64,000 nt of DNA, taken from positions 124,001-188,000 of the IMG/VR virus record IMGVR_UViG_3300009103_000001; one strand, written 5' to 3'. Below, piece by piece: positions 80-22,718 of this stretch (positions within the stretch are counted from its first letter, which is position 1; every line of letters starts with the position of its first letter). The notes beneath the pieces were generated by a model. The model was given only the letters and a program-made list of their open reading frames with translations. It ran no database searches and was not told where the DNA came from. The position numbers were made by a program, and so were the translations under genes.

Positions 80-892
80 TTATACGTTTTCTTCTTGCAT
101 ATATTTTATTCCCCTATCTTGTTTAAAATAACATTCTTTTTTAGCCGTATTAAACCAAAATCTAGCCTCTAAGGGGTCGATTTTTTCTTCACCATTATAA
201 TAATTAAAAAATAATGAATTTGGTCTCATATTTATTTTTTTATAACCAATCTTAGGTATGGTCATAATTTTTTTATCATAATATGTCATCCTTAAAAAGA
301 ATTCATAAATGAATTGTAGTTTAATACTAGGTTTCAAACCACTAATAGATTCAAAAGCTTCTTTTTTGTATATACCACCAGAAAATTGGAAGTTTGGAAA
401 ATTTAGTAATGAATCATTATCTAAGAAACCATGTCTATCTGAAAAATCTTTAGCCCAAACAGGTTCGTTTGTAAAATGTAAAAACTTACCTTCAACATTA
501 GCGTCTAACACTATAGGTAAAAATACATCTACATCATCATAGTGTTCAACATATTTATTAAAACTATCAAACCATATTTTAGAATATTCATCATCAACTT
601 CTAAAACAGAAAACCATTCTGTTTCGATTTTTGTTACACCGAAATTAATTTGTGAACAAAAATCAGTTTCACCATCATTTTCTACTATATCTAAAATATT
701 TTTTATTTTTTCATCAAAATCAAATTCATTGATTATATTTTTAGCATCACCATCTTTTGGTACAACTAATAAAAGTTTTTTAGGTAATACTTTTTGTTCC
801 CTAATACTACCAATAGCTTTAGCGAAATAATCTTTTTCATCTTCGTTTATTCTGTGTATTGGTATTATAACTGTTAAATCGTTTTTACTCAT
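80..892 (-). CDS. GT-A fold (family 2-like) glycosyltransferase
   Basis: N-terminal LTVIIPIH, acidic EVDD (DxD-like) motif and SGG motif; 270 aa. Confidence 0.7.
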   Translation of the reverse strand: MSKNDLTVIIPIHRINEDEKDYFAKAIGSIREQKVLPKKLLLVVPKDGDAKNIINEFDFDEKIKNILDIVENDGETDFCSQINFGVTKIETEWFSVLEVDDEYSKIWFDSFNKYVEHYDDVDVFLPIVLDANVEGKFLHFTNEPVWAKDFSDRHGFLDNDSLLNFPNFQFSGGIYKKEAFESISGLKPSIKLQFIYEFFLRMTYYDKKIMTIPKIGYKKINMRPNSLFFNYYNGEEKIDPLEARFWFNTAKKECYFKQDRGIKYMQEENV

Positions 893-899
893 TTTATAT

Positions 900-1979
900 T
901 TATTTTTGTTCTATTATTTCAGTTTCATTAAATTTCTCTAAACTAAGAGTAAATTCTTTAATAATTTTATTCCTTAAATTATCATAATATTCTTTAATAT
1001 TATTTTTTTGATTTTCTTCTGTGTAAGGCTCAACTGTTTTTTCCATTTCATCGTAAAGTTCTTTAGGTTCTAAATCTTCTAACCAAGCTTGAAAGTAATT
1101 ACCTAAAATATCTGTTATATTATTAACATTATTGGTCCACATACCATTTTTGTCTTCCATCCATTCTGGTACTAGATTAGGAACTTTACCTATAACTGGG
1201 ACACCACATTTCATTGATTCTAATGGAAATGTACCAAAACCTGATACATCATCAACCCAAATAGAAACACACGATTCAGATAAGTTTTTAGCAAATTTTT
1301 CTCTTGGCATTCCTCTTAAATCTCTAAAAGTAACCCATTTTAGGTGTGGGTATCTTATATAAAAACTTTTAAATATTTTAACAGTATCTCTTTGGTCTCT
1401 AGTAAAAATAGTTACGATAGGTTTTTTTGGTTTTTCATCCTTTTTAAAATATTCTGGTATAGATAATTTTACTATACCAACCTCCATATTAGGATTACCA
1501 AATAAACTTTCTACATATTCTTTTTGTTTATCAGAAGTTGTAATAACATCTCTAACATTATAATCAGCCCAAGTTTTACCTGGTTCTAACATTTCTAATA
1601 TATAATCATATGATTGTGACATAATCATTTTTCTACAAGGTAATTGTTTAATTTGTTCTAATATATTAGCAAAAATTTCTGGTACTATAACAACGTCAGA
1701 ACCACTAACTTTTAGTTGTTGTGATTCAATGGATAGGTGTGGTAGATTTGAATATTCTTCACCTAACCAAGTTACAACACTTGTATAATCATTTTTTTCA
1801 TGTAAAACATATGCTTTATATCCCAATTCATTTAACACTTTTACGTGTTCATATATGTTAGCCACACCGGCTGTGGGATTACCTTTAGTGTCCATAGTGA
1901 AAAAATATAAACCAAATTCTTTTTTTTCTAATTTAGATATATTTTCTTCAATTCTAGCTTTTATTTCATGTTGTTCCAT
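900..1979 (-). CDS. GT-B fold glycosyltransferase
   Basis: C-terminal GFGTFPLESMKCGVPVIG matches the GT-B E-x7-E/GxPV region; 359 aa. Confidence 0.7.
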   Translation of the reverse strand: MEQHEIKARIEENISKLEKKEFGLYFFTMDTKGNPTAGVANIYEHVKVLNELGYKAYVLHEKNDYTSVVTWLGEEYSNLPHLSIESQQLKVSGSDVVIVPEIFANILEQIKQLPCRKMIMSQSYDYILEMLEPGKTWADYNVRDVITTSDKQKEYVESLFGNPNMEVGIVKLSIPEYFKKDEKPKKPIVTIFTRDQRDTVKIFKSFYIRYPHLKWVTFRDLRGMPREKFAKNLSESCVSIWVDDVSGFGTFPLESMKCGVPVIGKVPNLVPEWMEDKNGMWTNNVNNITDILGNYFQAWLEDLEPKELYDEMEKTVEPYTEENQKNNIKEYYDNLRNKIIKEFTLSLEKFNETEIIEQK

Positions 1980-1981
1980 AT

Positions 1982-2332
1982 TTATTTTTTTAATATAAGT
2001 TTATTTTTTAATAATGTGTTAAATGAAAGTCTAAAGGGTATTGATAATTGATTTTCTAATTTTTTAAATCCCATACTTTCATCTATTATTCCATTTTCAT
2101 TTAATACTGTTTCTATCATAGCTTTAACAACTTCCCATTTTGCCATATCAATAAGTGGTCCATTGTAGTATTCTATTTTTTCATCTAAGTTATCTTCTTC
2201 TTCTTCAGTTTTTTTAATTTTTTTATTTAATAATTCGTCAATACTTTTTTCTTCATTGATTTTAATAAAATCTGAAAGTGCGTGAATATCTAAATAAAAT
2301 TTTTCACCTGCTAACTCAAATAAATCATTCAT
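1982..2332 (-). CDS. Hypothetical protein
   Basis: 116-aa ORF tightly packed in the operon. Confidence 0.6.
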   Translation of the reverse strand: MNDLFELAGEKFYLDIHALSDFIKINEEKSIDELLNKKIKKTEEEEDNLDEKIEYYNGPLIDMAKWEVVKAMIETVLNENGIIDESMGFKKLENQLSIPFRLSFNTLLKNKLILKK

Positions 2333-2374: not shown

Positions 2375-3052
2375 TTAATTAAAACGTTCTTCATTTACCT
2401 TTTTCAAAAAATCTGAGTCGATTTCTTTTATTGATTTTATACGTATACAAGATTGTGTGGTTTTTTTATTAAAGTCTTTATCTATTACTATATTTATTTT
2501 ACTAATAGATAATTTATTATTGATAATTTTAGGATGGTCGGTAACCATAACATCAACATAATCCCAAACTTTAGAATATTCTTTTACAAATTTTATATTA
2601 GGGCAAGTACACTTATTTTTAGATAGAAAAAATAGTGTTGACGGCACGGCTAACCCACCTTCCCTACTTATAATAATAAATTCATGTTCTGGATTATCAA
2701 TTATTAATTGATTTAATGTTTCCATAGCAGAAGAAACACTCTCATTAGCATAACCAAAAATTTCTAAGGCACATTTTTCATATAAAAATTCGTCTATTGT
2801 TGTGGTAGTTTTTGTACTCACTAATTCAGTAGTTTTTTCACTTTCTATAAAATCAGTTTCATTAAAGTTTGGGTCGAAACCTAATTCACTTTGTTGTGTT
2901 TCTTCTTCTGGAAATGTAATCCATTTCTCTAAATCATAATCAACCACCACAATAGGTTCTTTATCTTCTGAAGAAAAATATTTATCATGTGTTTCTTCTA
3001 TTTTTCCAAATAAATCCCTCAATACACCATCAATTGATATTCCTATTATCAT
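2375..3052 (-). CDS. HAD-like (5'-nucleotidase NT5C-like) protein with degenerate motif I
   Basis: Likely start MIIGISIDGVLRD at 3052 (the ORF track extends to 3094, overlapping phoH). xDGV motif lacks the first Asp; later IISRE and VMVTDHP motifs. Confidence 0.5.
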   Translation of the reverse strand: MIIGISIDGVLRDLFGKIEETHDKYFSSEDKEPIVVVDYDLEKWITFPEEETQQSELGFDPNFNETDFIESEKTTELVSTKTTTTIDEFLYEKCALEIFGYANESVSSAMETLNQLIIDNPEHEFIIISREGGLAVPSTLFFLSKNKCTCPNIKFVKEYSKVWDYVDVMVTDHPKIINNKLSISKINIVIDKDFNKKTTQSCIRIKSIKEIDSDFLKKVNEERFN

Positions 3053-3062
3053 TTTTTTAATT

Positions 3063-3821
3063 TTAATTTTCCAAGTCGTCAAAAACATGTTCAATAATCT
3101 TAATTATTGGGTTTCTAACTACATCATCTGGGTCTGTTAATGTTACAGTACCAAAATTATCTATATCTTTAAATTTATCTATAATAATTTCAAGAGAACT
3201 ATCTTTTTTATTTCTAATATCTTTTTGTCTAACATCACCTAGTATAACCATTTTCGAATTATTACCAATCCTGGTCATAAGTGTTCTTATATTTTCCATT
3301 GATATATTTTGACACTCATCAATTATGATAACAGAGTTATCAATACTTCTACCTCTAGCAAAGGCTATAGGTAAAACCTCTAAAAGACCTAATTCTTTTA
3401 GTTTTCTAGTTCTAGTTTTACCAATTAATTTTCTAAAATTATCCATAAAAGAGTCCACATATGGTTCCATTTTTTCTTCCATATTACCCTTAAGAAAGCC
3501 TATTTCTTCATTTTTAAGGGTTGTAACTGACTTAATTAAAACAATTCTTTTAAATTTAACAGTGTTTTTAAGTAATTTTAAAGCTTCAGCACAAGCTAAA
3601 AAAGTTTTTCCTGTCCCAGGTAAACCATTACATATAGTTATTTCATTTTTCTTTATCGATTCTGTTAATTTTTTTTGATTTTGTGTTTTATGTTTTACAT
3701 TAACTTTTATTAAATTGAATAATTTTACTTCTTCAATGTTGTTGTGATTTAATAATAATTCCAATTCCTCTAAGTCTTCTATTGGAAATTGTTTATTGTG
3801 TCTTCCGTTTTTTCTACTCAT
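3063..3821 (-). CDS. phoH: PhoH-family ATPase
   Basis: Walker A GLPGTGKT; IGFLKG, FARGRS, IIDECQN, LMTRIG and GDVRQKD motifs. Confidence 0.9.
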   Translation of the reverse strand: MSRKNGRHNKQFPIEDLEELELLLNHNNIEEVKLFNLIKVNVKHKTQNQKKLTESIKKNEITICNGLPGTGKTFLACAEALKLLKNTVKFKRIVLIKSVTTLKNEEIGFLKGNMEEKMEPYVDSFMDNFRKLIGKTRTRKLKELGLLEVLPIAFARGRSIDNSVIIIDECQNISMENIRTLMTRIGNNSKMVILGDVRQKDIRNKKDSSLEIIIDKFKDIDNFGTVTLTDPDDVVRNPIIKIIEHVFDDLEN

Positions 3822-4131
3822 CTAAAATATATTTATCATTTTTTATACTTGGCGTTTTTATTACCATTATTGAACAATCTTCAAGAACTTCAAATTCTGT
3901 AATCTCATTTGGATTTATGACCATTAATTCATTTTCATTACAAACAATTCCTGAATATTTTACCCTTCCATTTATAATAAAGTTTAACTCTGTTGCTACT
4001 TTATGTAAATGTTTTTCACCGATAAAACCTTTTTTATATTTTTTATATCCAACTTCAAATAAATCGGTTTTATATACAGATTCTTTAAATCCACCGATAA
4101 ACCATTCATTATTTATTTTCAATTTTTTCAT
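3814..4131 (-). CDS. Small cupin-fold protein
   Basis: HLHKVATE cupin-type metal motif, 105 aa, next to sugar-nucleotide genes. Confidence 0.55.
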   Translation of the reverse strand: MKKLKINNEWFIGGFKESVYKTDLFEVGYKKYKKGFIGEKHLHKVATELNFIINGRVKYSGIVCNENELMVINPNEITEFEVLEDCSIMVIKTPSIKNDKYILDE

Positions 4132-5168
4132 TATTTATTTTTTAAAATAGTATTCATAACCTCATTAGGAATACCAATAGTAATTTCCGATTCTTTATAA
4201 TAATCTAACCAATAAGAAACCATCTCATCTAACATTGATTCAAATGTGTATTTAGGTTTCCATCTTAAGTCTTCCCTTAATTTAGTAGAATCCCCCTTTA
4301 AATCATGTAATTCTTCAGGTCTCATATGTTTTTCATCAATCACTACATAATCTCTAAAATCTAAATTTAATCTATTAAAAGTATATTCACATAAATCCTT
4401 AACCGAATGTGAAATACCTGTCGCACATACATAATCATTAGGTTTATCATCTTGTAACATTAACCACATAGCTTCAACATAATCTTTAGCGTGACCCCAA
4501 TCCCTAGTGGCATCTAAGTTACCTAAGTGTAATTTTTCTTGTAATCCTAATTTAATCCTAACCGCTGCCTTAACAACTTTATTGGTAACAAAATTAGTTC
4601 CTCTTCTTGGTGATTCATGATTAAAAAGAATTCCGTTCCATATTTTCATACCATAAGAGTTTCTATAGTTTCTTGTAATATTATATGAAAATACTTTAGC
4701 ACACCCATATGGTGATACGGGATTCATGGGGGTAGTTTCTCTTTGATATCCATCCGCATCAATATTATTACCAAACATTTCAGATGAAGAAGCTTGGTAT
4801 ATTTTAGAATTAGGTGAAACCATTCTAACTGCCTCTAACATGTTTAAGGTACCTAGACCAGTTGCATTTGCAGTATAGATTGGTTGGTCAAAACTAACTC
4901 TTACATGTGACTGTGCTGCCAAATTATATATCTCATCAGGTTGTACTTTTTGTAGTACCCTAACTAAAGACGCCATATCAATTAAATCAGCGTATTCTAA
5001 TTTTAATTTATCAAAAATATGTTCAATTCTAACTGATTGTGTTTCTGATACAGAATTTCTTTTAACTATACCCCAAACTTCATATCCTTTATCTAAAAGT
5101 AGTTCGGCTAAATACGAACCATCTTGTCCATTAATCCCTGTTATTAAAGCTTTTTTACTCATATTCAT
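4131..5168 (-). CDS. gmd: GDP-mannose 4,6-dehydratase
   Basis: [61 protein letters not shown]. Confidence 0.95.
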
Positions 5169-6303
5169 TAATTATATTTACTATTTTATCTATATCTTTT
5201 TTTGATAAGTCTTGATGGTTTGGTATATAAAATCCTTTTTTATCTAATAATTCACAATTTTCTAACCCTTCTTTACTACCTTTCCACATAGGTTTATTTG
5301 CCATATTACCAGCGATTAAAGGTCTTACTTCTATATCTTCATCTAGTAAATTTCTAATTATATCATTTCTCATAGGATGTACTATTGGTATAGCAAAACT
5401 AGAAACATAATCGTTTGGTTTTTCTTCTAAGTGTAACTGACTAACCTTTAACTTGTCGATATAGTATTTAAAATTTTCCCTTCTTTTTGAAGAGTATCCA
5501 TCTAATTTATCTATGGCTCTTAAACCAATAAAAGCCTGCAAGTCGGTAGAGCGAAGATTCATACCTGGTAAATAAAAATTATACAAACCATCAAAGTCTG
5601 AACAACCATAAGATTCTCTAATGTCTTTTTGTACATCTGAAGGCAAGTCTCTATCCCATCCATGACTTCGCATCATTAGTAATTGGTGGTAAAACCCTTC
5701 ATCATTAGTATTAATAAAACCACCTTCAATAGTGGATAAATGATGACCAAAATACATTGAATAAAAGGAGGCAAAACCAAAAGAACCTAAATATTTTTCT
5801 TGATACTTAGAACCCATACTCTCACAGACATCCTCTAATAATATTACCTGGTATTTTTTACATAAATCAACAACTTTTTCCATATTAGGCACTAACCCCA
5901 AAGGGGATACTAAAATAAATGTAGAAGGGTTTTCTCGTTGAAATATTGATTCTAGTGCCTCTAAATCACATGATAAATCTGATAAGTTACAGTCACACAT
6001 AAAAGTGTCGTAACCTAAAAGCATTGGGGAACTAACGTCTGTAGACCAACTCAGAGCAGGAACAACAATTTTTAAATTTTTTAATCTATTAGTTTCTTTA
6101 AGGGTTGCCAATGTAAGTAATATAGAAGAAGAACCTGAGTTGACAAAAACTGAATATTTAGTTCCTATTTTTTTTGCCCATTTTTTTTCTAACTCCCAAG
6201 TCAATTCGCCCTTTGTAAGTCTAGGTATTTCATCTTGATTGAGCCATTTTGTTAAAGCTTTAATATCCGCTTTATCTATTGTATCACTTACTAATTTTAT
6301 CAT
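5155..6303 (-). CDS. colD: DegT/DnrJ-family PLP enzyme, ColD-type GDP-4-keto-6-deoxymannose 3-dehydratase
   Basis: VNSGSS, EDVCES; [13 protein letters not shown] has His where aminotransferases have the catalytic Lys; lies between gmd and an fcl-like gene. Confidence 0.75.
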
Positions 6304-7217: not shown

Positions 7218-7735
7218 TCAATATTTAAACTCATTAATCGACCATTTTCTTTATCCATATGTGGTATATAGGCTTGTGAAAAATCATCCATATCAGAGTG
7301 GTCAGTTTTCCTCCAATCATACCTATAAACTTCACTAAAACCTAACGATTTTAAAGAGTTTTGTAAAGAGTTAAAATCCCATGTACAATAATGAAAATTT
7401 TGTTCATAATTTTGTCCCCCATATAAAAACCCCATTAATTTAGTTAGGTCCTTATTGTCATTATAGTACTCAACAACTTTTTCAAAATCTGGTACAGCAA
7501 TTCTTAATATGCCTCCATTTTTTAACACTTCAAACCATCTTTTTAGAACTTTTTTATATTCATGTCTACCAAAATGTTCTAAAACATGACAAGCATAGAT
7601 TACATCGACACTATTATTATTAACATTATTTAATTTAGCTATATCGTCAACGAGGTCGGGGTTAACGTCCTCTCTAATATCTATATTAATATAACCCTTT
7701 ATTTTTTTGTCACCACAACCTAAATGTAATTTCAT
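7205..7735 (-). CDS. Class I SAM-dependent methyltransferase (type 11-like)
   Basis: KLHLGCG, HVLEH, LKNGGILRIAVPD. Confidence 0.8.
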   Translation of the reverse strand: MKLHLGCGDKKIKGYINIDIREDVNPDLVDDIAKLNNVNNNSVDVIYACHVLEHFGRHEYKKVLKRWFEVLKNGGILRIAVPDFEKVVEYYNDNKDLTKLMGFLYGGQNYEQNFHYCTWDFNSLQNSLKSLGFSEVYRYDWRKTDHSDMDDFSQAYIPHMDKENGRLMSLNIECVK

Positions 7736-7741
7736 TTTTAA

Positions 7742-9183: not shown

Positions 9184-9188
9184 AATTT

Positions 9189-9854: not shown

Positions 9855-9856
9855 TT

Positions 9857-10450: not shown

Positions 10451-10451
10451 A

Positions 10452-12425: not shown

Positions 12426-12436
12426 TTTTTAATTTT

Positions 12437-15123: not shown

Positions 15124-15124
15124 T

Positions 15125-15904: not shown

Positions 15905-16659
15905 TTTTCTGGTATTAAATCATTTGTGTTATGTGATATCGCTTGGCCGAACCATTTTTTTGGTGCGATTACTTTTTTATTATTATTTTTATTTAACCAT
16001 GCTCCCCACCAACTAAAAGAAGAATTAGCTATTATATTATTTTTACATAATGACATTAACCATAGTTCAACGTAATCATCATTATCATCGATAAAAATAA
16101 AATTATCCCCATCAAAAACATCCTTACACCAATCAATATCATCCGAAAAAACCAAGTATTTAGTATCCTTTTCAAATAAACCTATGGCTCTATTATAGTA
16201 ACCTAGATTACACGTTGGGTGGTGATTAGTTAGACCTAAATAATCACCTCTTCTAACATGTATTGAACATGTTTCTTCACCTAATATATTATTATATTTT
16301 TTTTCTATTTTATCTAAAGAATTTTTATCAATACTATATAAGTCTAAAATTTTTTCACGGTTATTTAAAAAATATTTTTCACTTTGGTAATATCCGTGTA
16401 GTTTTATATTGGTTTTATATGGTATTTTTTGATAATGGAAGAATGGTTCAGAATACGTATTTTTAATAGGTAAAGGTGTCTCAACAAATTTTATATTACG
16501 TAATATGTTATTTTTATAACTTGATATTGGTTCGTGTACTCTTAAACAATCATTTATATTAAAAATTAATTCATCATCATTATCTAAAGCTAAAGAATAG
16601 GCAGAAGTTATTTGAAACATATAATTACCTAACCCACCTAATAAATTTGATGTTACCAT
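15889..16659 (-). CDS. GT11 alpha-1,2-fucosyl/colitosyltransferase
   Basis: GGLGNYMFQ, GYYQSEKYF, SIHVRRGDY, IANSSFSWWGAWL. Confidence 0.9.
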   Translation of the reverse strand: MVTSNLLGGLGNYMFQITSAYSLALDNDDELIFNINDCLRVHEPISSYKNNILRNIKFVETPLPIKNTYSEPFFHYQKIPYKTNIKLHGYYQSEKYFLNNREKILDLYSIDKNSLDKIEKKYNNILGEETCSIHVRRGDYLGLTNHHPTCNLGYYNRAIGLFEKDTKYLVFSDDIDWCKDVFDGDNFIFIDDNDDYVELWLMSLCKNNIIANSSFSWWGAWLNKNNNKKVIAPKKWFGQAISHNTNDLIPEKWVRI

Positions 16660-17354
16660 ACCTCATGTTTAATTTTAACGTGATTTATTTCTTGTTGTAA
16701 ACTTCTTGTATACATAGAACTAACTTGGTATTGATGCATTCTATTACTTATTAATACATCTTTAACTATAAAAGGTAAACCATATTTCTTATATAATTGA
16801 TAATAATACTCACAATCCATTAACATAACTAAATCTTCATCAAATAATGGTATATCATTATTTTTAAAAGAAAGTACTGATGGTGAACTTATAGTATTAA
16901 CACCTTCTAAAATTTTATCATTCCAACTAGGTACCATTTCTCTATTAAAGGTTTTGCCATCATTAGTGTGGTTACACCCACTAACTAACCAATTACAATC
17001 ATTATTTTTAAATGTATCATTTATTATTTGTAATGACTCATCATTAACAAATAAATCATCTTGAAACATAACTTTAATTATATCACCAGTGGCGTTCTTA
17101 ATACTAACATTTGTATTAGCAGGCCCATTACCTCTTTTATCTATATTTTTAATATAGATAATATCAAAAAAATTACGATATTCATCAATTAAATTAAGTA
17201 TATCATTACCAACACTATGGTCTGATATAACTACATTAAAATTTTTATATGTTTGTCTTTTTATCGTGTCAAACATTTCATTTAAAAAAGTAACACCATA
17301 TCCGTGTTGTTCCCATGTTGGTATACATATTGATATTTTTAAATCCAATTCCAT
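16653..17354 (-). CDS. Glycosyltransferase family 2
   Basis: ISICIPTW, VISDHS, MFQDD, MDCEYY. Confidence 0.8.
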   Translation of the reverse strand: MELDLKISICIPTWEQHGYGVTFLNEMFDTIKRQTYKNFNVVISDHSVGNDILNLIDEYRNFFDIIYIKNIDKRGNGPANTNVSIKNATGDIIKVMFQDDLFVNDESLQIINDTFKNNDCNWLVSGCNHTNDGKTFNREMVPSWNDKILEGVNTISSPSVLSFKNNDIPLFDEDLVMLMDCEYYYQLYKKYGLPFIVKDVLISNRMHQYQVSSMYTRSLQQEINHVKIKHEVW

Positions 17355-18097
17355 GTTTTTATGTGTTTCTCTAGTTGTTCTTTATTCATATTATTTATTT
17401 TATGAAATTCTTGGCCATTAAACTGATAAAATGGGTTTTGGTCTGAACTGTTTGGTGTTCTGTGATGTGTTAAATGATATAAATCACCATTAGTTCTACA
17501 CATTTCATGGCCCATTTTTTGTACTCTAACAATTCTTTCCCAATCCTCATGACCCCAAGAAATAAAGTTTTCATTCTCCCAACCAATACTACCATATCTG
17601 TTTTTATCAAAAAAGAAAGCACCACCAACCGAATTTGGGTTGAATAATGTACATTCATTTAATGGTATTTCGTCCAGTTTATTTGATTCTACTTTATCAA
17701 AAAACTTTTTTGGTATATCATAAAATTTACCAGCATAAGGAAAACACATTGTACAACCATTTAATACTTTTTCTTTACAATCGATATAGTCTTGTACTTT
17801 AAAAATAACATCAACATCATAATTAACTATTATATCTGTTTTAGCCATTTTAGTCATATTATTTAATAATCTTGTTCTATGAAATAGTTTTTCATCATTT
17901 TTTTCAAAAACATATACTATTTTTTTTGATACTGAATTTACAAAATCTTCATTAGATTCTTTATCACTATCTAAAACAATAATATTTGTGTCAAAATTTT
18001 TTAATAAATAATTCATAGATAGTTTAAAATTTATTCTCCTATCATCTGAATCAAATCTTACTGGTACTATAAATGTAACGTCTTTAAAGTTTATCAT
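17339..18097 (-). CDS. GT-A glycosyltransferase (GT2/GT7-like)
   Basis: TFIVPVR, NYDVD, WENENFISWGHEDWE, LYHLTH. Confidence 0.75.
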   Translation of the reverse strand: MINFKDVTFIVPVRFDSDDRRINFKLSMNYLLKNFDTNIIVLDSDKESNEDFVNSVSKKIVYVFEKNDEKLFHRTRLLNNMTKMAKTDIIVNYDVDVIFKVQDYIDCKEKVLNGCTMCFPYAGKFYDIPKKFFDKVESNKLDEIPLNECTLFNPNSVGGAFFFDKNRYGSIGWENENFISWGHEDWERIVRVQKMGHEMCRTNGDLYHLTHHRTPNSSDQNPFYQFNGQEFHKINNMNKEQLEKHIKTWNWI

Positions 18098-19623
18098 TAT
18101 CCTCTATTTTGAAATATTGCTTGTAATTGTTGTTGTACTTGTTCTGGTTTCGCTAATGGTGTTTCTGTTGGTATGTGTCCATGCTTTTTCTTATACCATA
18201 ATGTACCTTTTCTAAAATTTTCATTCCATGTATTTGTATGTGCTATAGTACTTTCCTCTATTGAATTTGGTATATCTGTAAGGTATTTCCAACTCTCATC
18301 TATATCAGCAAAATACCAAAAAGCTGGATGATACATTTTTTTAATAGCTTGGTATGTATGTTCAACATGTTCCCAAGCGTTTTTAAATACTGGGTCAAAC
18401 CCGCCTAAATCTTCTAATACTGGTCTATAATAATATGAAAAAGCACCCACACAATTAGGGTATAAAGCTATTTTAATTTCATCACCATAAGGTACAATCA
18501 TTCTAGGGTTAGGTTTACCTTCAACATCCTTTCTTTCACTTAAATCATTAAACCCTTTACTACCAACTTTATTTGCCGGACCATGTAAAGCAAAATTAAG
18601 GTGTTTTATACCAGAAATTAAAGAATGTCTAATATATTCTTTAAAAACATTTTCATCTTTAATAAGAATATCATCTTCCATTATGAATATATGTTCACAA
18701 TCAGTATTTTTCATTAAATAATTAATAGCTGTTGTTTTAGCGGCACCAACAGATTTATTTGTTTCATGTTGAATTATGTGTGCATTCTCTGGATAAGCGT
18801 CTTTAGAATATGGAGTACCATCATTAACTATAACAAAATTTTTAACCCATTTAGGGACTGTAAAGGCACTTTGTTTAATTCTATGTTCAGCATTATAAGT
18901 GACCATACCAAAACCAATGGAGTTTTGGTCGAAAATTAATTTTTCTTCCCAAGTTTTATTTTTTGTTAATCTTACTGGTAATTTATCTTTATATTTTTCT
19001 TCAAACCTAACTTTATGTCCTTCCCATTGTTCATTAGTTCTACCTATAGATAAGTGTGTAATTCTTATAAATGTTGTTAAACCAATTTTTACACCATCTA
19101 AGTAATTTGGGAAACAAAAGGATAGGTCATAAAAATGAAACCCATGAAAATCTTCATCAAATTTATGTTTAATTTTTGTTTTATTAATAGCGAAAAATAA
19201 ACCATCTAAAACAACCATATCTGTTATTTTTCTACCTTGGTCTTTTGAATAATAATTTGTCCATCGCCTACCTTCGTGTTGGTGTGATACGATTCCATTC
19301 ATAGACTCTTTTATTGTCCACCACCTACCATCCACTAAATCGGTTGTTCCAGCAATACCAATAATACCATATTCTGGGTTTTTATCAAATATTGATTTTA
19401 ATTTTCTACTCCAATTTTTAGTATTAAAAATAATATCATCATGACAAAATACTACAATATCATTTTCAGCTTTTTCTAAACCTTTATTATAGGCTTGTGT
19501 TAATGACATTTCACCGTCATTAATTATTTGTATAATATCAATATTTTTTACACCACAAGTTGATTTTATTTGTTTAATAAAATCTGGTTTATCTTTTTTG
19601 GTTGAATATACAATACTAATCAT
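18097..19623 (-). CDS. Two-domain GT-A glycosyltransferase
   Basis: Domain 1 has FCHDDI...LDGLFFA...FHFYD; domain 2 has GMVTYN...VNDGT...IMEDD...WEHVEH. Confidence 0.75.
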   Translation of the reverse strand: MISIVYSTKKDKPDFIKQIKSTCGVKNIDIIQIINDGEMSLTQAYNKGLEKAENDIVVFCHDDIIFNTKNWSRKLKSIFDKNPEYGIIGIAGTTDLVDGRWWTIKESMNGIVSHQHEGRRWTNYYSKDQGRKITDMVVLDGLFFAINKTKIKHKFDEDFHGFHFYDLSFCFPNYLDGVKIGLTTFIRITHLSIGRTNEQWEGHKVRFEEKYKDKLPVRLTKNKTWEEKLIFDQNSIGFGMVTYNAEHRIKQSAFTVPKWVKNFVIVNDGTPYSKDAYPENAHIIQHETNKSVGAAKTTAINYLMKNTDCEHIFIMEDDILIKDENVFKEYIRHSLISGIKHLNFALHGPANKVGSKGFNDLSERKDVEGKPNPRMIVPYGDEIKIALYPNCVGAFSYYYRPVLEDLGGFDPVFKNAWEHVEHTYQAIKKMYHPAFWYFADIDESWKYLTDIPNSIEESTIAHTNTWNENFRKGTLWYKKKHGHIPTETPLAKPEQVQQQLQAIFQNRG

Positions 19624-20111
19624 TTTTCTATTTCAATAATATTAATTGGTTCTTCGCAAAACACTGATAAATGACATGATGCTTTTATCGATTCTTTAAC
19701 AGAACTACCTAAATATAAGGCTGATAACGCAAAGTCCATACCAGCACCAATTGCGGTATAATCTGTTATTTCTTTAATAAAAAACCCTTCCATCATAAAG
19801 GCCTTACCTTCTAAAACTATTACATATTGGTTATTTAGTTTTGTTTCAGTTGTTTTACTTGTCATCCATGTTTGAAATTCTGACATAAATTCCATTAAAG
19901 CATCCACAGACGCATTTTTAGGTTTACGTGTTTTACAATACAATAAAAACAATCCACCTTCTTGCGCGTCTCCAACATCACCAATAACCATATCGTTAAC
20001 TTTATTTAATTTAGCTAACTTATCTTTTTCTTGCGTCCAACCAGAAACTAATATACTATCAGCTCCTACAACTATTTTTTTATTTGTCACTTTTACCGCT
20101 ACTACACTCAT
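19620..20111 (-). CDS. HslV/proteasome-beta-like Ntn hydrolase
   Basis: N-terminal (M)SVVAV...VGADS and AIGAGMDFALSAL, typical of proteasome-like subunits. Confidence 0.6.
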   Translation of the reverse strand: MSVVAVKVTNKKIVVGADSILVSGWTQEKDKLAKLNKVNDMVIGDVGDAQEGGLFLLYCKTRKPKNASVDALMEFMSEFQTWMTSKTTETKLNNQYVIVLEGKAFMMEGFFIKEITDYTAIGAGMDFALSALYLGSSVKESIKASCHLSVFCEEPINIIEIEK

Positions 20112-20117
20112 TTTTTT

Positions 20118-20702
20118 TTAATTTTTTCCAGTAGAACCAAATCCACCATCACCTCTATTAGTTTCATTTATTTCCGTTACTTCAACTAAGTCACCATAAT
20201 CACCACCAACTCTATGTGAAACAACACCTTGAGCAATTCTATCACCTTTTTCCCAAGTAAAAACATTATTACTTAAATTTATTAATAATACTTTAACCTC
20301 ACCTCTATAACCTGTATCTACAGTACCAGGTGTATTTAATACTGTAACACCATTTTTATAAGCCATACCACTTCTTGGTCTTATTTGTAATTCATACCCT
20401 TGTGGTAATTCGAAAAATAGACCTGTTGATACTAATGTTCTTTCTAATGTTTTTAATGTACCAGCTACGTTAGCTCTTAAATCAAAACCAGAATCACCTT
20501 CTTTAGCATAAACTGGGTTTTTATTACTAGATTTATTAATATATTTTATAGTTATTTTTTGGTCCTTATTTTTCCCATAATTTTCTAATGATTCAAGTAG
20601 CCCTATCGTCATATCTAATTCATCTTTAGTTTCTTTTGGCAACATATCCATAGTTGACAATGCTTTTAATTCACTAATTTGTTTTTTTATATCTTCATCC
20701 AT
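20118..20702 (-). CDS. dut: Trimeric dUTPase
   Basis: DSGFDL, IRPRSG, PGTVDTGYRGE, RIAQ, RGDGGFGSTG. Confidence 0.95.
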   Translation of the reverse strand: MDEDIKKQISELKALSTMDMLPKETKDELDMTIGLLESLENYGKNKDQKITIKYINKSSNKNPVYAKEGDSGFDLRANVAGTLKTLERTLVSTGLFFELPQGYELQIRPRSGMAYKNGVTVLNTPGTVDTGYRGEVKVLLINLSNNVFTWEKGDRIAQGVVSHRVGGDYGDLVEVTEINETNRGDGGFGSTGKN

Positions 20703-21412
20703 TATTTTAATCTATTTAATTTATCTATTATATCTATCAATGCTTTAACATCTTTCTCACAATATTCTTTAATTTCTTCATGGTTTTGTTTCCAATAGTT
20801 TTCTGTTACATTACCACCCTTAACTGCACCATTTTTAGGTGAATCAATATCCAATACGGTACACATTAAATCTAACGAACCCAAAGACCAATTATTACCA
20901 AATTGCCAAACATCTTTTGTATCCAAAACTCTTAGTTCCCAAGGTTTGGTATTATGGTTTGGGAATAATTTAGGGGGTTTCATACCATTAATGAAAAATC
21001 TTTTCCCTAAAAAGGGTATATCAAACATTTTAATACTTTGACCACAAAGTTCAAAACCAAGTGGTTCAATCTTATCAAAAACTTCTCTAGTTTTAGTTAA
21101 TATATGTATCTCATCTTCACCATAAAAAGATTCATACCTAGTCTCACCATTTTTTGTCACAAAAGCCATAGAAACACAAGCAACTTTACCAAATTCTGGA
21201 TAAAAAGCCGCAGTTTGTCTATAAACTTCTTGATTAATATCCTCAATAGACATGTCTTCAATTATGGTAGTTTCATCGTTAACTTTTTTCCTAAAAGAAT
21301 CATAATATGATAACCACATATCTAATTCTCTTTTAGGTAATTGTGTTAATAATTCATATTGACTAACTGTTTCAATATCAAAAAATAATAATTTATCTAT
21401 TTTAAATTTCAT
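20702..21412 (-). CDS. Stand-alone PolB-like 3'-5' exonuclease (DnaQ/DEDDy fold)
   Basis: FFDIETV, FDIPFL, DTKDVW, YCEKDV. Confidence 0.8.
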   Translation of the reverse strand: MKFKIDKLLFFDIETVSQYELLTQLPKRELDMWLSYYDSFRKKVNDETTIIEDMSIEDINQEVYRQTAAFYPEFGKVACVSMAFVTKNGETRYESFYGEDEIHILTKTREVFDKIEPLGFELCGQSIKMFDIPFLGKRFFINGMKPPKLFPNHNTKPWELRVLDTKDVWQFGNNWSLGSLDLMCTVLDIDSPKNGAVKGGNVTENYWKQNHEEIKEYCEKDVKALIDIIDKLNRLK

Positions 21413-22718
21413 TTGTTTCCTCTATTAATTGTTTTATTTCTTTTTTATTATCTTTTACTATGGTTTTATAAAACTCAGCTCTTGTATGTGTCACAGTATT
21501 TATGTGATATTTATCTTTTACTGTTTCATATAAATTATTAGATAATAATTCTACTAAACTAGGGTTATCTTTTAATTTTTTCATCGACTTATACCAATCC
21601 TTATGGTTTTTCCTAGTTTCTACTAACATAGCGTTACCATTTTCATTAATTTTACCACCATACTCTATTAATGGTACACAATCTATTGTATATGGTCCAT
21701 AATTTTGTGCAATTAAAGCTTTTTTGTGGAACCCCGCTTCAATAACTTTTAGTTGTGATTTTACCTTATTAAACATGTGTTCTTTTAATGGTGCCATAGA
21801 AACATCAAATAAGTTATAATTAGATGCATAGGTTGTAATAGGTTTGGTCCAAACCCTTCTATATAGTTTATCATTATCATAATAATCTTCATCAGATTCC
21901 CTATCATATTTTTTTAATTGTTTATTAAAATCTTCGTTTAATAACTGATAGTTTTTTGTGAAAAATTCTTCATATCTACACCACACACTTTCTTCTGGTT
22001 TAATTTTTCTAGTTCTTTGTTGTCCAGTATTTTTATCTAACTCAGTGATATTACCCCTAGTATCAAAACCACAAATCACCATTTGCATATTTTCTTTATT
22101 TTCACTTAAAAATCTAACAACACTTTCATTCATCAAAGACAAATCATGATAATGTGAAGAACCACCTAACCAACCAAATCTTATTAATTTATTTGATTTT
22201 TCTGGGTTTGGTGTGAATTGTTTTTCTTCTGGGTCTATTGTATTAGGGAATACTACTACGTTTTTATTTAAATTTTTAATTTCTTCAGCGAATATTTTAG
22301 TGGTAGTACTAACATAGTTAACTTTTTTTATGTTTTCTCTTATTTTTTGACTTAATTTTTCTTTAATTATTATCTGATAAGCAGGATGTTCTTTACTTGG
22401 TTGCCAATAATCATCTAAATCCATTATAGTCAAAATACCTAGTTTATGTATTTTATTCAATATCTCAAACATATCTTCTAGATATACTTGTTGATATGCA
22501 CCGTTTTTTAATGATGGTAGTGTTCTGTGAAAATGTATAATATCAAAATTTTTCAAATACTTTTCATCCCAACTAAAAGTATCTGTACCGGCTGGCACAA
22601 TTTCAACATAGAAATCATCATTATACAATTCTTGTAATTTCATATGGGGTTCAATTGAACGAAATTTTGAAACCCCTGTTCTATCTGAAGGGAATACTAA
22701 AACATTTATTTTACTCAT
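21402..22718 (-). CDS. GT-B glycosyltransferase
   Basis: DLDDYW, GWLGGSSH, FNKVKSQLKVIEAG. Confidence 0.75.
   Translation of the reverse strand: MSKINVLVFPSDRTGVSKFRSIEPHMKLQELYNDDFYVEIVPAGTDTFSWDEKYLKNFDIIHFHRTLPSLKNGAYQQVYLEDMFEILNKIHKLGILTIMDLDDYWQPSKEHPAYQIIIKEKLSQKIRENIKKVNYVSTTTKIFAEEIKNLNKNVVVFPNTIDPEEKQFTPNPEKSNKLIRFGWLGGSSHYHDLSLMNESVVRFLSENKENMQMVICGFDTRGNITELDKNTGQQRTRKIKPEESVWCRYEEFFTKNYQLLNEDFNKQLKKYDRESDEDYYDNDKLYRRVWTKPITTYASNYNLFDVSMAPLKEHMFNKVKSQLKVIEAGFHKKALIAQNYGPYTIDCVPLIEYGGKINENGNAMLVETRKNHKDWYKSMKKLKDNPSLVELLSNNLYETVKDKYHINTVTHTRAEFYKTIVKDNKKEIKQLIEETNEI

What the first reader, a model, noticed from the sequence alone, without database searches (positions are those of the whole stretch)
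80..22718. A 22-kb phage glycan-building island with no membrane-assembly genes
Seen: about 11 GT genes (GT-A, GT-B, GT10, GT11, NodZ-like, DUF616-like), a GDP-sugar pathway, an epimerase, 2 sulfotransferases, 3 methyltransferases and an amidotransferase, all co-oriented. No flippase, polymerase, undecaprenyl-phosphate transferase or obvious transmembrane GT is in the window. Established: serotype-converting phage cassettes (gtrABC) need lipid-linked and membrane components. Inference: the glycan is built in the cytoplasm directly on a phage acceptor, most plausibly the S/T/N-rich tail and LamG proteins or the capsid, giving a complex sulfated, methylated, amidated deoxysugar coat. DNA glycosylation is the alternative.
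Basis: partly seen in the sequence, partly recalled or inferred. Interest (0 to 1): 0.75.

Follow-up and report, generated by a model that had tools for sequence, protein, structure and literature searches.

The report
Phage glycan island with swappable cassette
A large uncultured phage of Bacteroidota carries four conserved sugar-adding enzymes framing a gene cassette that differs from one relative to the next (here 19 genes for a fucose-rich, sulfated, methylated glycan) and no membrane export genes, so it probably builds a glycan inside the cell, most likely on its own particle, though the target is unproven.

Summary
Window 80-22718 holds 29 co-oriented minus-strand ORFs with 11 glycosyltransferase (GT) genes (12 GT domains). 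It also holds a GDP-mannose dehydratase/aminotransferase/reductase trio, an epimerase, one firm and one weak sulfotransferase, three methyltransferases and an AsnB-like amidotransferase. All are soluble.

No flippase, polymerase or polyprenyl-phosphate transferase exists on the 210-kb contig (only about 64% complete) or in a complete 380-kb relative.

New here: the island is composite. Four virus-specific GTs are backbone genes shared with relatives, and one of them is more conserved than the DNA polymerase. Between PhoH and that GT sits a hypervariable cassette of 2.5-7.6 kb in relatives and 14.3 kb here. Relatives' cassettes encode fucose/methyl, sulfate, nonulosonic-acid/pyruvate or Kdo/sialyltransferase-like chemistry.

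The lineage fits the recently described 'moraphages', whose variable islands were left unexamined.

The acceptor remains inferred. A virion protein is favoured (about 0.45). Support: the core GT's second domain is homologous to GTs inside the structural modules of other phages, including Myrna, whose virions are glycosylated; giant-virus systems show the same conserved-plus-variable logic.

DNA glycosylation is weakened because the only thymidylate-synthase homolog is canonical. Host-surface remodelling through host machinery is not excluded. The island lacks the late promoter, and S/T-richness of the fibre proteins is not evidence.

The parts
80..892 (-). g186, conserved core GT2 (GT-A) glycosyltransferase, soluble
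   Evidence: Pfam Glycos_transf_2 above cut-off. 62% identical orthologs in G001 and G002 at the same position. Syntenic in more than 10 IMG/VR loci.
900..1979 (-). g187, conserved core GT-B glycosyltransferase
   Evidence: Weak Glycos_transf_1 hit. PDB 8XSG glucosyltransferase AmGGT at E 4e-10. 52% identical orthologs in relatives.
1982..2332 (-). g188, conserved small protein of unknown function
   Evidence: No family match. Conserved at about 50% identity and syntenic.
2375..3094 (-). g189, conserved HAD-superfamily phosphatase (NT5C-like N-terminus); nucleotidase or sugar-phosphate phosphatase
   Evidence: Pfam NT5C covers residues 14-67 only. 65% identical orthologs.
3063..3821 (-). g190, PhoH-like ATPase; the conserved left anchor of the variable cassette
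   Evidence: Pfam PhoH E 2e-58. Found 2.5-7.6 kb from the g210 ortholog in relatives.
3822..18096 (-). Hypervariable glycan cassette, 14.3 kb and 19 genes. It contains: a small cupin-like ORF, GMD, a DegT aminotransferase, an Fcl-like reductase, three methyltransferases, a NodZ-like GT, two GT2, an AsnB-like amidotransferase, Sulfotransfer_2, TOD1/MUCI70, an unknown ORF, a GalE/TviC-like epimerase, a weak sulfotransferase, GT10, GT11 and a GT7C-like GT.
   Evidence: Annotations. Content differs completely or partly in each relative. The GMD trio is nearest to Bacteroidota genes.
18097..19623 (-). g210, conserved tandem GT-A glycosyltransferase (N-domain Glyco_tranf_2_5, C-domain GT2-like); right anchor of the cassette and the most conserved GT
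   Evidence: Pfam. More than 2000 full-length homologs at 56-83% identity. 5th most conserved of 76 proteins shared with G001. AF2 model pLDDT 88.8. Fold matches. C-domain homologous to Myrna gp234 and ENT47670 gp40.
19620..20111 (-). g211, HslV-like peptidase (backbone gene, probably unrelated to the glycan)
   Evidence: PHROG 1040 at E 2e-17. 79% identical in G001.
20118..20702 (-). g212, dUTPase/dCTP-deaminase-like (backbone, nucleotide metabolism)
   Evidence: Pfam dUTPase E 4e-25. Syntenic in all close relatives.
20702..21412 (-). g213, PolB-type 3'-5' exonuclease (backbone)
   Evidence: Pfam DNA_pol_B_exo2. 74% identical in G001.
21402..22718 (-). g214, conserved core GT-B glycosyltransferase of a virus-only family
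   Evidence: PHROG 7162 at E 6e-38. ESM-atlas neighbours are 96-100% viral GT1-like clusters. 64-70% identical orthologs.
22758..22770 (-). 13-mer TTTTTATTTACTA, 40 nt upstream of g214; candidate promoter or operator for the island transcript
   Evidence: Occurs only twice in the genome. The other copy is upstream of the replication gene g221. No late-promoter match is placed upstream of any gene start from g186 to g214; the one PWM hit in that interval lies inside g209's coding sequence.

Best explanation
This is a two-tier, membrane-independent glycosylation system of a jumbo myovirus of Bacteroidota that fits the 'moraphage' lineage.

Tier 1 is a set of four conserved, virus-specific, soluble glycosyltransferases: g214, the tandem GT-A g210, g187 and g186. 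Together they have five catalytic domains. A HAD phosphatase may belong with them. They are proposed to install an invariant core glycan on a conserved acceptor in the host cytoplasm.

Tier 2 is a cassette that is exchanged between phages at a fixed site between PhoH and g210. It elaborates the core. In this phage the cassette would do three things:
- Make GDP-6-deoxyhexose and amino-sugar donors from host GDP-mannose (GMD, aminotransferase, Fcl-like reductase).
- Add sugars with seven more GTs, including GT10-, GT11- and NodZ-like fucosyltransferase families.
- Sulfate the product (using host PAPS), O-methylate it and amidate it.

The most likely acceptor is one or more virion proteins, giving a strain-specific glycan coat.

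Shown: the gene content, solubility of all the enzymes, absence of membrane partners, the conserved-plus-variable architecture, and the viral ancestry of the core GTs.
Inferred: the order of action, the sugar identities beyond the GDP-mannose branch, and above all the acceptor.
For: Architecture:
- The backbone order g214 | exonuclease | dUTPase | g210 | cassette | PhoH | HAD | g188 | GT-B | GT2 recurs in G001, G002, five large metagenome contigs and over 20 IMG/VR loci.
- Cassettes run from 4 to 10 genes in relatives against 19 here. Their chemistry differs: NeuB plus pyruvyl transferase; GT29-like plus KdsA-like; GT17 plus sulfotransferase; fucose plus FkbM methyltransferases.

Core GTs:
- g210 is 82% identical to its G001 ortholog. 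It ranks 5th of 76 shared proteins, above PolB (77%) and the sheath (65%). That implies a fixed donor and acceptor.
- g210 and g214 sit in families that are almost entirely viral.

No membrane route encoded.

Links to virion glycosylation:
- The g210 C-domain aligns with Myrna gp234 (pairwise E 2e-13) and Cronobacter phage ENT47670 gp40 (E 4e-16).
- Both of those lie inside structural modules. One is next to a virion structural protein; the other is between the major tail protein and the tape measure.
- Myrna virions are glycosylated (PMC12363180).
- Among enzymes of known function, the g210 N-domain is structurally closest to polypeptide GalNAc-transferases (Z 16-17.5).
- The whole protein resembles bifunctional enzymes, including the collagen GTs and Mimivirus R699.

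Analogy:
- All chloroviruses share a five-sugar core, made partly by a conserved multidomain GT, plus variable decoration (PMC7826918).
- Megavirinae have clade-specific clusters of 6-33 genes for virion fibrils (PMC10117803).

A third sulfotransferase (g127) lies in a late-promoter unit directly upstream of the fibre protein g128.
Against: - No glycan has been observed, and the acceptor is purely inferred.
- No late promoter is placed upstream of any island gene. That motif precedes the sheath, tube and fibre genes, and also g184 and g179 next door. The island instead shares a unique upstream motif with a replication gene and sits in the nucleotide-metabolism/replication module. This is where DNA-modifying GTs sit in T-even phages (own knowledge).
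- Similarity to Myrna gp234 is 26% over about 190 residues. I could not read the primary paper to confirm that gp234 is the enzyme that glycosylates the virion.
- GT-A fold matches are generic. The best match overall is Majastridin, of unknown function.
- g127 homologs occur in varied contexts in other phages, and G001 lacks one.
- The contig is only about 64% complete.
- Soluble GTs are also the norm in host lipid-linked pathways (own knowledge).
Confidence: 0.45

Rival explanations
1. Host-envelope remodelling. The phage GTs act at the cytoplasmic face of the membrane on host undecaprenyl-phosphate-linked intermediates. The host's own initiating transferase, flippase or ABC exporter, and ligase then move the altered glycan to the surface. 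The benefit would be blocking superinfection, stopping progeny from adsorbing to infected cells or debris, or deterring grazers.
For: - This is the usual interpretation of the similar GT/epimerase clusters in large cyanomyoviruses. S-SCSM2R has 13 GTs including GT10 and GT11 (PMC12801897).
- Cassette sugar genes are of cellular, Bacteroidota type.
- O-antigen-like cassette diversity is expected if the product must match or mask variable host surfaces.
- Non-late, replication-type regulation fits an early-acting function.
- Apart from the initiating enzyme, O-antigen GTs are normally soluble (own knowledge).
Against: - The core GTs belong to virus-only families. g210 is more conserved than the polymerase across phages whose cassettes, and presumably hosts, differ. 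That is hard to reconcile with variable host acceptors.
- Host Wzy polymerases and many flippases are specific for their repeat unit (own knowledge). A foreign 12-domain glycan would probably be handled poorly.
- No lysogeny or any membrane component is encoded.
Confidence: 0.25
2. DNA hypermodification. The conserved GTs glycosylate a modified base in phage DNA, and the cassette diversifies the glycan in an arms race with modification-dependent nucleases.
For: - The island lies among dUTPase, exonuclease, PolB, PhoH and a nucleotidase-like HAD protein. It shares an upstream motif with a replication gene.
- Phage DNA GTs are diverse and derive from LPS- or teichoic-acid-type enzymes. They can add up to trisaccharides (Pyle et al.; PMC13326640).
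- An arms race would explain the cassette turnover.
Against: - No route to a glycosylatable base was found.
- The contig and the complete relative each have a single thymidylate-synthase homolog. The contig's copy (g062) keeps Leu143, Cys146, Asp169 and Asn177, so it is a true ThyA and not a hydroxymethylase or 5hoC synthase. G001's ortholog was located, but its residues were not examined.
- No Tet/JBP hit was found, although the control was silent for that model.
- Twelve GT domains plus sulfo-, methyl-, amido- and pyruvyl-transferases far exceed any known DNA glycan.
- GT10, GT11 and NodZ-type fucosyltransferases and carbohydrate sulfotransferases have no precedent on DNA (own knowledge).
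Confidence: 0.1
3. A free or lipid- or small-molecule-linked product. The tandem GT-A g210 acts as a co-polymerase like K4CP, PmHS2 or LARGE1. It would make a soluble, sometimes sulfated, polysaccharide in the cytoplasm that is released at lysis, for example as a protective or adhesive matrix. Alternatively, the enzymes glycosylate host proteins or metabolites.
For: - The top whole-chain fold matches of g210 are the bifunctional polymerases K4CP, PmHS2 and LARGE1.
- Sulfotransfer_2 recurs in several cassettes: ours, L043, L044 and L211.
- A TviC-like epimerase together with an AsnB-like amidotransferase suggests uronic-acid or uronamide sugars.
Against: - Whole-chain TM-scores are only 0.25-0.35. 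At domain level the hits are generic GT-A.
- There is no precedent for a phage-made cytoplasmic polysaccharide.
- No UDP-sugar dehydrogenase was seen in the island.
Confidence: 0.12

Closest known systems
Moraphages (Perez-Hernandez et al. 2025, PMC12619734)
   Same: Aquatic jumbo myoviruses with predicted Bacteroidota hosts. [quoted passage not shown] Here I find four conserved GTs, PhoH, dUTPase, PolB, an exonuclease and an HslV-like peptidase. I also find a sigma factor and a ClpA-like protein, and two Hc1 genes in the complete relative.
   Different: That paper only lists the GTs and says the variable islands remain to be examined. The fixed-site cassette, its chemistry, the missing membrane genes, the promoter classes and the link to Myrna-type GTs are new here. 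I could not compare sequences with the published genomes directly.
Autonomous virion glycosylation of giant viruses (chlorovirus PBCV-1 capsid N-glycans; Megavirinae fibril glycans)
   Same: Soluble virus-encoded GTs plus nucleotide-sugar pathways, including GMD in chloroviruses (own knowledge), that work without ER or Golgi membranes. A conserved core built partly by a conserved multidomain GT, plus lineage-specific decoration. Methylated and pyruvylated rare sugars. Clusters of 6-33 genes.
   Different: Those viruses infect eukaryotes, and their glycans have been chemically solved on known virion proteins. Here the host is a bacterium and nothing has been measured. Sulfotransferases and three fucosyltransferase families are extra. 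The variation sits in one replaceable cassette at a fixed locus.
Mycobacteriophage virion glycosylation (Che8, Corndog, Myrna; Freeman et al. 2023, cited via PMC12619734 and PMC12363180)
   Same: Phage-encoded cytoplasmic GTs modify capsid and tail-tube subunits. The g210 C-domain is a sequence homolog of Myrna gp234. A Che8 GT appears among the fold matches.
   Different: Those systems have 2-3 GTs next to structural genes, no sugar-donor pathway and no tailoring enzymes. Here there are 11 GTs, donor synthesis, and sulfation, methylation and amidation, all in the replication module and without a late promoter.
Cell-wall/LPS gene clusters of large cyanomyoviruses (S-SCSM2R, S-SCSM1, P-SSM2)
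   Same: Large marine myoviruses with many soluble GTs (GT10, GT11, GT2, GT1), NDP-sugar epimerases and KdsA/KdsB. Their function is unresolved.
   Different: Different phage lineage and host phylum. Those genes are read as host-surface or DNA modification. No conserved-core plus fixed-site cassette architecture and no sulfotransferases were reported there.
Bacterial O-antigen and capsule loci, and phage gtrABC serotype conversion
   Same: Cassette-like replacement of GT, donor and tailoring genes between conserved flanks. Chemistry typical of O-antigens (perosamine- or fucose-type donors, uronamide, methylation).
   Different: The defining membrane components are absent from the contig, and those tested are absent from a complete relative. 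No integrase or lysogeny module was seen.
Phage DNA-glycosylation gene clusters (T-even alpha/beta-GT; MT+TET+GT clusters; 5hoC arabinosylation)
   Same: GTs embedded among nucleotide-metabolism genes, with glycan diversity between related phages.
   Different: Those need a hydroxymethylase, a 5hoC synthase or a TET enzyme, and add at most three sugars. Here the only thymidylate-synthase homolog is a canonical ThyA, and the enzyme set is far larger.

Membership tests
Lipid-linked surface-glycan pathways (Wzx/Wzy, ABC-dependent, gtrABC serotype conversion) | Flippase (Wzx or GtrA) or another polytopic exporter | tested here: not met
   PF01943 has no hit in G000. PF04138 has no hit in G000 or G001. 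Controls ring. Hydropathy finds no protein with 5 or more TM segments in G000 apart from a tape-measure-like protein, and none with more than 4 TM in the complete G001.
Lipid-linked surface-glycan pathways (Wzx/Wzy, ABC-dependent, gtrABC serotype conversion) | Initiating polyprenyl-phosphate sugar transferase (WbaP/PglC-type Bac_transf or WecA/MraY-type) | tested here: not met
   PF02397 has no hit in G000. PF00953 has no hit in G000 or G001. Controls ring. G000 is only 64% complete.
Lipid-linked surface-glycan pathways (Wzx/Wzy, ABC-dependent, gtrABC serotype conversion) | Polymerase or ligase (Wzy/WaaL family) | tested here: not met
   PF04932 gives only a 14.8-bit, 68-aa hit containing a stop codon in G001, against a cut-off of 31.7 bits.
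Phage DNA glycosylation systems | An enzyme that creates a glycosylatable base (dCMP/dUMP hydroxymethylase, 5hoC synthase, or a TET/JBP dioxygenase with a C5-methyltransferase) | tested here: not met
   G000 and G001 each have a single thymidylate-synthase homolog. G000's copy has canonical L143, C146, D169 and N177 and is about 50% identical to ThyA structures (criteria). G001's residues were not examined. Tet_JBP has no hit, but the control was silent, so that part is weak. A C5-methyltransferase was not searched.
Phage DNA glycosylation systems | Modified bases present in virion DNA | not testable with these tools
   Needs nucleoside LC-MS or raw long-read signal.
Virus-encoded autonomous virion glycosylation (giant viruses, mycobacteriophages) | Soluble virus-encoded GTs, with or without nucleotide-sugar synthesis, and no dependence on virus-encoded membrane machinery | tested here: met
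Virus-encoded autonomous virion glycosylation (giant viruses, mycobacteriophages) | Homology of a GT to an enzyme of a phage with proven virion glycosylation | tested here: inconclusive
   The g210 C-domain aligns with Myrna gp234 at 26% identity (E 2e-13 pairwise; E 1e-6 against the 2.3-Gb phage collection). I could not confirm that gp234 is the responsible enzyme.
Virus-encoded autonomous virion glycosylation (giant viruses, mycobacteriophages) | Glycan covalently attached to virion proteins | not testable with these tools
   Needs glycoproteomics of virions. No cultured representative was found in the phage collection.
Virus-encoded autonomous virion glycosylation (giant viruses, mycobacteriophages) | Co-expression or co-location with structural genes | tested here: inconclusive
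   No late-promoter site is placed upstream of any gene from g186 to g214. The next genes downstream (g184, g179) have the two strongest late promoters. A third sulfotransferase lies in a late unit beside the fibre genes.
Moraphage lineage | Core gene set: four GT orthogroups, PhoH, dUTPase, PolB, exonuclease, peptidase, sigma factor, ClpA-like ATPase; predicted Bacteroidota host | tested here: met
   Host signals are a CHU_C/T9SS domain, Bacteroidota-type promoters and Bacteroidota-like GMD.
Moraphage lineage | Histone H1-like (Hc1, PF07432) protein, reported in the complete genomes | tested here: inconclusive
   Two copies in the complete relative G001 and none in the 64%-complete G000.
Moraphage lineage | Phylogenetic placement with the published genomes | not testable with these tools
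   The published genomes are not in the collections I could search.

The most novel reading that the evidence does not exclude
This phage lineage coats its virions, inside the bacterial cytoplasm, with a complex glycan. The conserved core is laid down by ancient phage-specific GTs. The outer part is switched like a serotype by swapping one cassette. In this phage the outer part would be a sulfated, O-methylated, fucose/amino-deoxyhexose-rich glycan resembling fucoidan or a glycosaminoglycan. That would be the first sulfated glycoconjugate made by a bacteriophage. For phages of polysaccharide-degrading marine Bacteroidota, such a coat could act as bait or camouflage toward host glycan-binding surface proteins.
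Probability: 0.3. Interest if true: 0.85.

Novelty: new variant of a known kind. Interest (0 to 1): 0.6.

Why it matters
Marine and freshwater phages often carry puzzling 'LPS' or glycosyltransferase genes, and nobody has shown what they act on. This lineage makes the question tractable.

- It provides one GT (g210) with more than 2000 near-full-length homologs that is more conserved than the polymerase.
- It provides a single fixed site where the glycan chemistry is swapped, much as in O-antigen serotypes.

If the target is the virion, tailed phages of Gram-negative bacteria would join giant viruses and mycobacteriophages in autonomous particle glycosylation. Sulfation would be a new element. 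This could matter for adsorption, particle stickiness, grazing and host range in aquatic systems.

If the target is the host surface or DNA, the same cassette map shows which enzymes to test. The soluble forms of families that are Golgi enzymes in eukaryotes (GT10, GT11, GT29-like, Sulfotransfer_2) may also be useful as glyco-engineering reagents.

Tried and rejected
1. Near-identical DNA and PolB/sheath protein searches in the cultured-phage collection found only very distant relatives. No cultured model exists.
2. The genes left of the window (g179-g185) have no Pfam or PHROG matches. I guessed that g180 is baseplate-hub-like from a motif but could not support it.
3. I rejected S/T-richness as a pointer to the acceptor. 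g128 and g130 are SHAEG/YadA-head-like beta-roll fibres.
4. I tested whether the fibre-adjacent sulfotransferase g127 is generally linked to fibres. Its 212 homologs sit in varied contexts.
5. The MptE-like protein in G001's cassette cannot be claimed as a Maf-type flagellin glycosyltransferase. Its Pfam score is at the threshold, and its only PDB hit is an archaeal pterin kinase at E 0.04.
6. g186 and g187 have no homologs in cultured phages.
7. The g214 model was too poor (pLDDT 68) to search.
8. The 8XSG hit of g187 is a small-molecule glucoside glucosyltransferase and says nothing about the acceptor.
9. I could not retrieve Freeman et al. 2023.
10. The Tet_JBP search had a silent control.
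11. Fold matches of g210 to polymerases and to ppGalNAc-transferases are suggestive but generic for GT-A.

Full report
**What the window is.** The window is bases 124001-188000 of a single 210,157-bp viral contig with 29.9% G+C. IMG/VR classes the contig as linear, and CheckV rates it about 64% complete.

It is a contractile-tailed phage. It has a tail sheath at 56711-59494 and giant multi-LamG proteins at 34333-52368. It also has a family-B DNA polymerase at 25223-28141, an SNF2 helicase and PhoH.

Three signals point to a Bacteroidota host:
- An ORF with a CHU_C type-IX-secretion sorting domain.
- Upstream elements matching the Bacteroidota TTTG/TAnnTTTG promoter consensus (the consensus is from my own knowledge).
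- A GMD whose nearest cellular homologs, at 71-74% identity, are from Saprospiraceae and other Bacteroidota. Everything else is at 57% or less.

No close cultured relative exists. IMG/VR holds relatives with 77-91% PolB identity, including a 380,343-bp record (G001) rated 100% complete.

All ORFs from 80 to 22718 are on the minus strand and tightly packed. Family searches give 11 glycosyltransferase genes with 12 GT domains:
- Three GT2.
- Two GT-B.
- One each of NodZ-like, TOD1/MUCI70, GT10, GT11 and GT7C-like.
- A 508-aa tandem GT-A.

The other glycan genes are:
- GMD (414 bits), a DegT-family aminotransferase and an Fcl-like reductase.
- A GalE/TviC-like epimerase.
- A firm Sulfotransfer_2 and a weak second sulfotransferase.
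- Three methyltransferases.
- An AsnB-like amidotransferase.

The NodZ-like and GT-B (900-1979) assignments are below curated thresholds.

Interspersed are genes with no obvious glycan role: PhoH, a HAD/NT5C-like protein, an HslV-like peptidase, dUTPase and a PolB-type exonuclease.

**No membrane machinery.**
- None of the island proteins has a hydropathy window near transmembrane values. That includes members of families that are membrane-anchored Golgi enzymes in eukaryotes.
- Across the contig, the only polytopic protein is a tape-measure-like 864-aa protein.
- Pfam models for Wzx, Bac_transf, GtrA, WecA/MraY-type transferases and Wzy find nothing real in the contig, while the control genomes ring.
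- Because the contig is incomplete, I repeated the test on the complete relative. It lacks the three families searched in it (GtrA, WecA/MraY-type, Wzy), and no protein in it has more than four predicted TM segments. Wzx and Bac_transf models were not run on G001.
- The single four-TM protein in that relative belongs to a virus-only family of unknown function.
- Neither phage has an APS kinase, so the sulfate donor must come from the host.

**The island is composite. This is the main new result.** Mapping the relatives' genes onto this genome shows that g214, g213, g212, g211 and g210 on one side are backbone genes. So are PhoH, the HAD protein, g188, the GT-B g187, the GT2 g186 and g185 on the other side. 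Everything between PhoH and g210 is replaced.

Gene contexts with precomputed Pfam labels, from five large metagenome contigs, repeat the pattern. So does a survey of IMG/VR loci. With both anchors present, the cassette is 2.5-7.6 kb (4-10 genes) in relatives. Here it is 14.3 kb and 19 genes, the largest seen.

Cassette contents differ sharply between phages:
- GT7C, GT11, GT10, FkbM methyltransferases and GMD/epimerase. This 'fucose type' is common but reshuffled.
- GT2, GT17 and a sulfotransferase.
- GT2, an MptE-like protein, NeuB, a pyruvyl transferase and a methyltransferase (G001).
- GT2, a GT29-like sialyltransferase, a DHDPS-like enzyme and a KdsA-like enzyme (G002).
- GT1, FkbM, epimerases and a cytidylyltransferase.
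- Two GT2, methyltransferases, DegT, a sulfotransferase and an acetyltransferase.

Sulfotransferases recur in several cassettes. The GMD-aminotransferase-reductase trio occurs in the same order on bacterial contigs. The cassette genes therefore look cell-derived.

**The core glycosyltransferases are old phage genes under strong constraint.**
- g210 has more than 2000 full-length homologs at 56-83% identity, some on contigs up to 293 kb.
- Its atlas neighbours, and those of g214, are almost entirely viral clusters.
- Against the complete relative, g210 is 82% identical. It ranks 5th of 76 shared proteins, above PolB (77%) and the sheath (65%). g214, g186 and g187 are at 68, 62 and 52%.
- More distant g210 homologs (54-57%) occur outside this synteny and without a cassette.
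- The two halves of g210 also exist as separate proteins in other phages.

A confident AlphaFold model (pLDDT 88.8) shows two GT-A domains. The whole-chain Foldseek matches are bifunctional enzymes:
- K4CP chondroitin polymerase.
- PmHS2 heparosan synthase.
- LARGE1.
- The collagen glycosyltransferases LH3 and ColGalT1.
- Mimivirus R699.

At domain level:
- The N-domain matches Majastridin (Z 21) and then many polypeptide GalNAc-transferases (Z 16-17.5).
- The C-domain matches B4GALNT1, GlfT2, WrtF and TarS (Z 14.5-16.5).

These matches show the fold and the tandem design. They do not identify the acceptor.

**Links to virion glycosylation.** In the cultured-phage collection, the g210 C-domain finds GTs in lambdoid coliphages, Cronobacter phages and Mycobacterium phage Myrna.
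- Pairwise, it aligns with Myrna gp234 at E 2e-13.
- It aligns with ENT47670 gp40 at 32% identity and E 4e-16. The DxD region and a GGFDP motif are shared.
- In both phages the gene is paired with a small 'glucosyltransferase' and lies inside the structural module. In Myrna it is just upstream of a virion structural protein. In ENT47670 it is between the major tail protein and the tape measure.

Myrna is one of three mycobacteriophages with glycosylated virion proteins (PMC12363180; PMC12619734). I could not obtain the primary paper to confirm that gp234 is the responsible enzyme.

**Testing the DNA-glycosylation rival.** The island sits in the replication and nucleotide-metabolism module, so this rival deserved a real test. 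Known routes need one of these:
- A thymidylate-synthase-family hydroxymethylase.
- A 5-hydroxycytosine synthase.
- A methyltransferase together with a TET-type dioxygenase.

The contig and the complete relative each have exactly one thymidylate-synthase homolog. The contig's copy is about 50% identical to solved ThyA enzymes. It keeps Leu143, Cys146, Asp169 and Asn177, the residues that PMC13326640 uses to separate true ThyA from hydroxymethylases and 5hoC synthases. I did not examine the residues of G001's ortholog.

No ThyX was found in the contig and no Tet/JBP in either genome, although the Tet/JBP control was silent. Known DNA glycans reach three sugars. Twelve GT domains with sulfation, methylation and amidation would be without precedent.

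**Expression class.** An ATATTTAT box lies 10-45 nt upstream of the sheath, tube, fibre and other structural genes. A position-weight matrix built from it gives 32 hits genome-wide (both strands). Of these, 28 pair with a gene start within 60 nt on the same strand, and 27 of them lie within about 40 nt.

The two strongest hits precede g184 and g179, the genes just downstream of the island. From g186 to g214 there is no hit upstream of a gene start; the one PWM hit there lies inside g209's coding sequence. The 141-bp gap upstream of g214 instead carries TTTTTATTTACTA. That 13-mer occurs only once more in the genome, upstream of the replication gene g221.

The island is therefore probably transcribed with the replication genes. 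This does not exclude a virion target, since the enzymes and sugar donors must exist before assembly. It removes one argument for a virion target, and it fits the rivals equally well.

**Candidate acceptors.** However, g128 and g130 consist of dozens of SHAEG beta-roll repeats of the YadA-head type. The window's giant proteins are arrays of LamG lectin-fold domains. Their composition reflects the fold, not mucin-like linkers.

A third sulfotransferase lies outside the window (g127, E 1e-19), in a late-promoter unit directly upstream of the fibre g128. The complete relative, whose cassette has no sulfotransferase, also lacks g127. Across 80 other viral contigs, however, its homologs sit in varied contexts. 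I treat this only as a hint.

**Placement and novelty.** The gene set matches the 'moraphages' described in late 2025. Those are jumbo phages with predicted Bacteroidota hosts, four core GT orthogroups, and PhoH, dUTPase, PolB, a sigma factor and a ClpA-like protein. They also carry a histone H1-like protein, of which G001 has two copies. That paper explicitly left the variable islands unexplored.

Large cyanomyoviruses carry comparable GT10/GT11/GT2 and epimerase sets of unresolved function.

The closest working analogues are giant viruses:
- All chloroviruses share a five-sugar core made partly by a conserved multidomain GT, plus variable decoration.
- Megavirinae use clade-specific clusters of 6-33 genes to glycosylate virion fibrils.

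I therefore rate this a new variant of a known kind. The general phenomenon is known. The fixed-site swappable cassette, the sulfation theme, the very high conservation of the tandem GT and the lineage-wide absence of membrane partners are new.

**Verdict.** The architecture is well supported (about 0.85): soluble enzymes, a conserved core plus a swappable cassette, and no phage-encoded export.

The acceptor is not established. My estimates are:
- Virion protein: about 0.45.
- Host envelope through host machinery: about 0.25.
- Free or other product: about 0.12.
- DNA: about 0.10.

Noticed in passing
window 56659-56683 (upstream of the sheath gene), and 27 other sites genome-wide, e.g. window 32749, 46440, 48917, 59536, 61222: A conserved ATATTTAT(A/T)nnAAAA box lies 10-45 nt upstream of virion genes. 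It is probably the phage late promoter, perhaps read by the phage sigma factor (G000 84505-85050). Of 32 PWM hits on both strands, 28 pair with a gene start.
   Followed up: partly
L005:13561-14373 (G000 73561-74373), outside the window: A third sulfotransferase (Sulfotransfer_3/1, E 1e-19; PHROG 27463) lies in a late-promoter unit directly upstream of a 996-aa SHAEG-repeat fibre protein. It has 212 homologs in viral contigs, usually preceded by an unannotated ORF of about 291-295 aa that has no counterpart in this genome.
   Followed up: partly
window 29838-30257 (+) and 30526-30879 (+): A small ORF carries a CHU_C type-IX-secretion C-terminal sorting domain, which is a marker of Bacteroidota hosts. 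Next to it is a cREC_REC 'cyclic-phosphate processing receiver' domain protein.
   Followed up: no
window 54419-56423 (+): A SET-domain protein, a class-I methyltransferase and a patatin-like phospholipase sit together between the fibre genes and the tail sheath. They could be protein-lysine methylation and lipid-attack functions carried in or near the virion module.
   Followed up: no
L023:2450-3058 and L023:4297-5034; L022:15264-16115 and L022:14254-15267: Relatives' cassettes encode a eukaryote-type GT29-like sialyltransferase (E 2e-26) with a KdsA-like synthase. One encodes a NeuB nonulosonic-acid synthase with a polysaccharide pyruvyl transferase. GT29 in a bacteriophage is unusual.
   Followed up: partly
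window 3814-4131 (-): A 105-aa ORF at the PhoH-proximal end of the cassette looks cupin-like by eye, so it could be a sugar ketoisomerase or epimerase. It has no family match at E below 0.01.
   Followed up: no
G000 35619-36668 (L003:5598-6671): The phage ThyA is canonical in its catalytic residues but carries an insertion of about 42 aa between the catalytic Cys-His strand and the QRS(x)D motif.
   Followed up: partly
G000 about 46.9-47.0 kb and 55.25-55.36 kb (outside the window): A G-rich element (GGGGGGTAGGGGGG followed by ATTTTTCTTAAGCCGC) is repeated in two intergenic regions of an otherwise 30% G+C genome.
   Followed up: no
G000 about 53-58 kb (outside the window): An array of about ten small minus-strand ORFs (50-100 aa, several with 1-2 TM segments), most preceded by nearly the same leader ending in AACCAAAACAAAGATG. 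This looks like a paralogous small-gene family with a shared translation-initiation region.
   Followed up: no
window 19620-20111 (-): An HslV/proteasome-like peptidase (PHROG 1040) is wedged between the dUTPase and the core GT g210. It is 79% conserved in the closest relatives and missing from more distant ones.
   Followed up: no
L145 (Marinimicrobia single-cell genome contig, 144 kb) and L141 (Pelagibacter MAG contig): Low-GC contigs labelled as non-Bacteroidota cells carry the same reductase-aminotransferase-GMD trio at 52-71% identity. They may be mis-binned or phage-derived, or they may show that the trio is mobile across phyla.
   Followed up: partly
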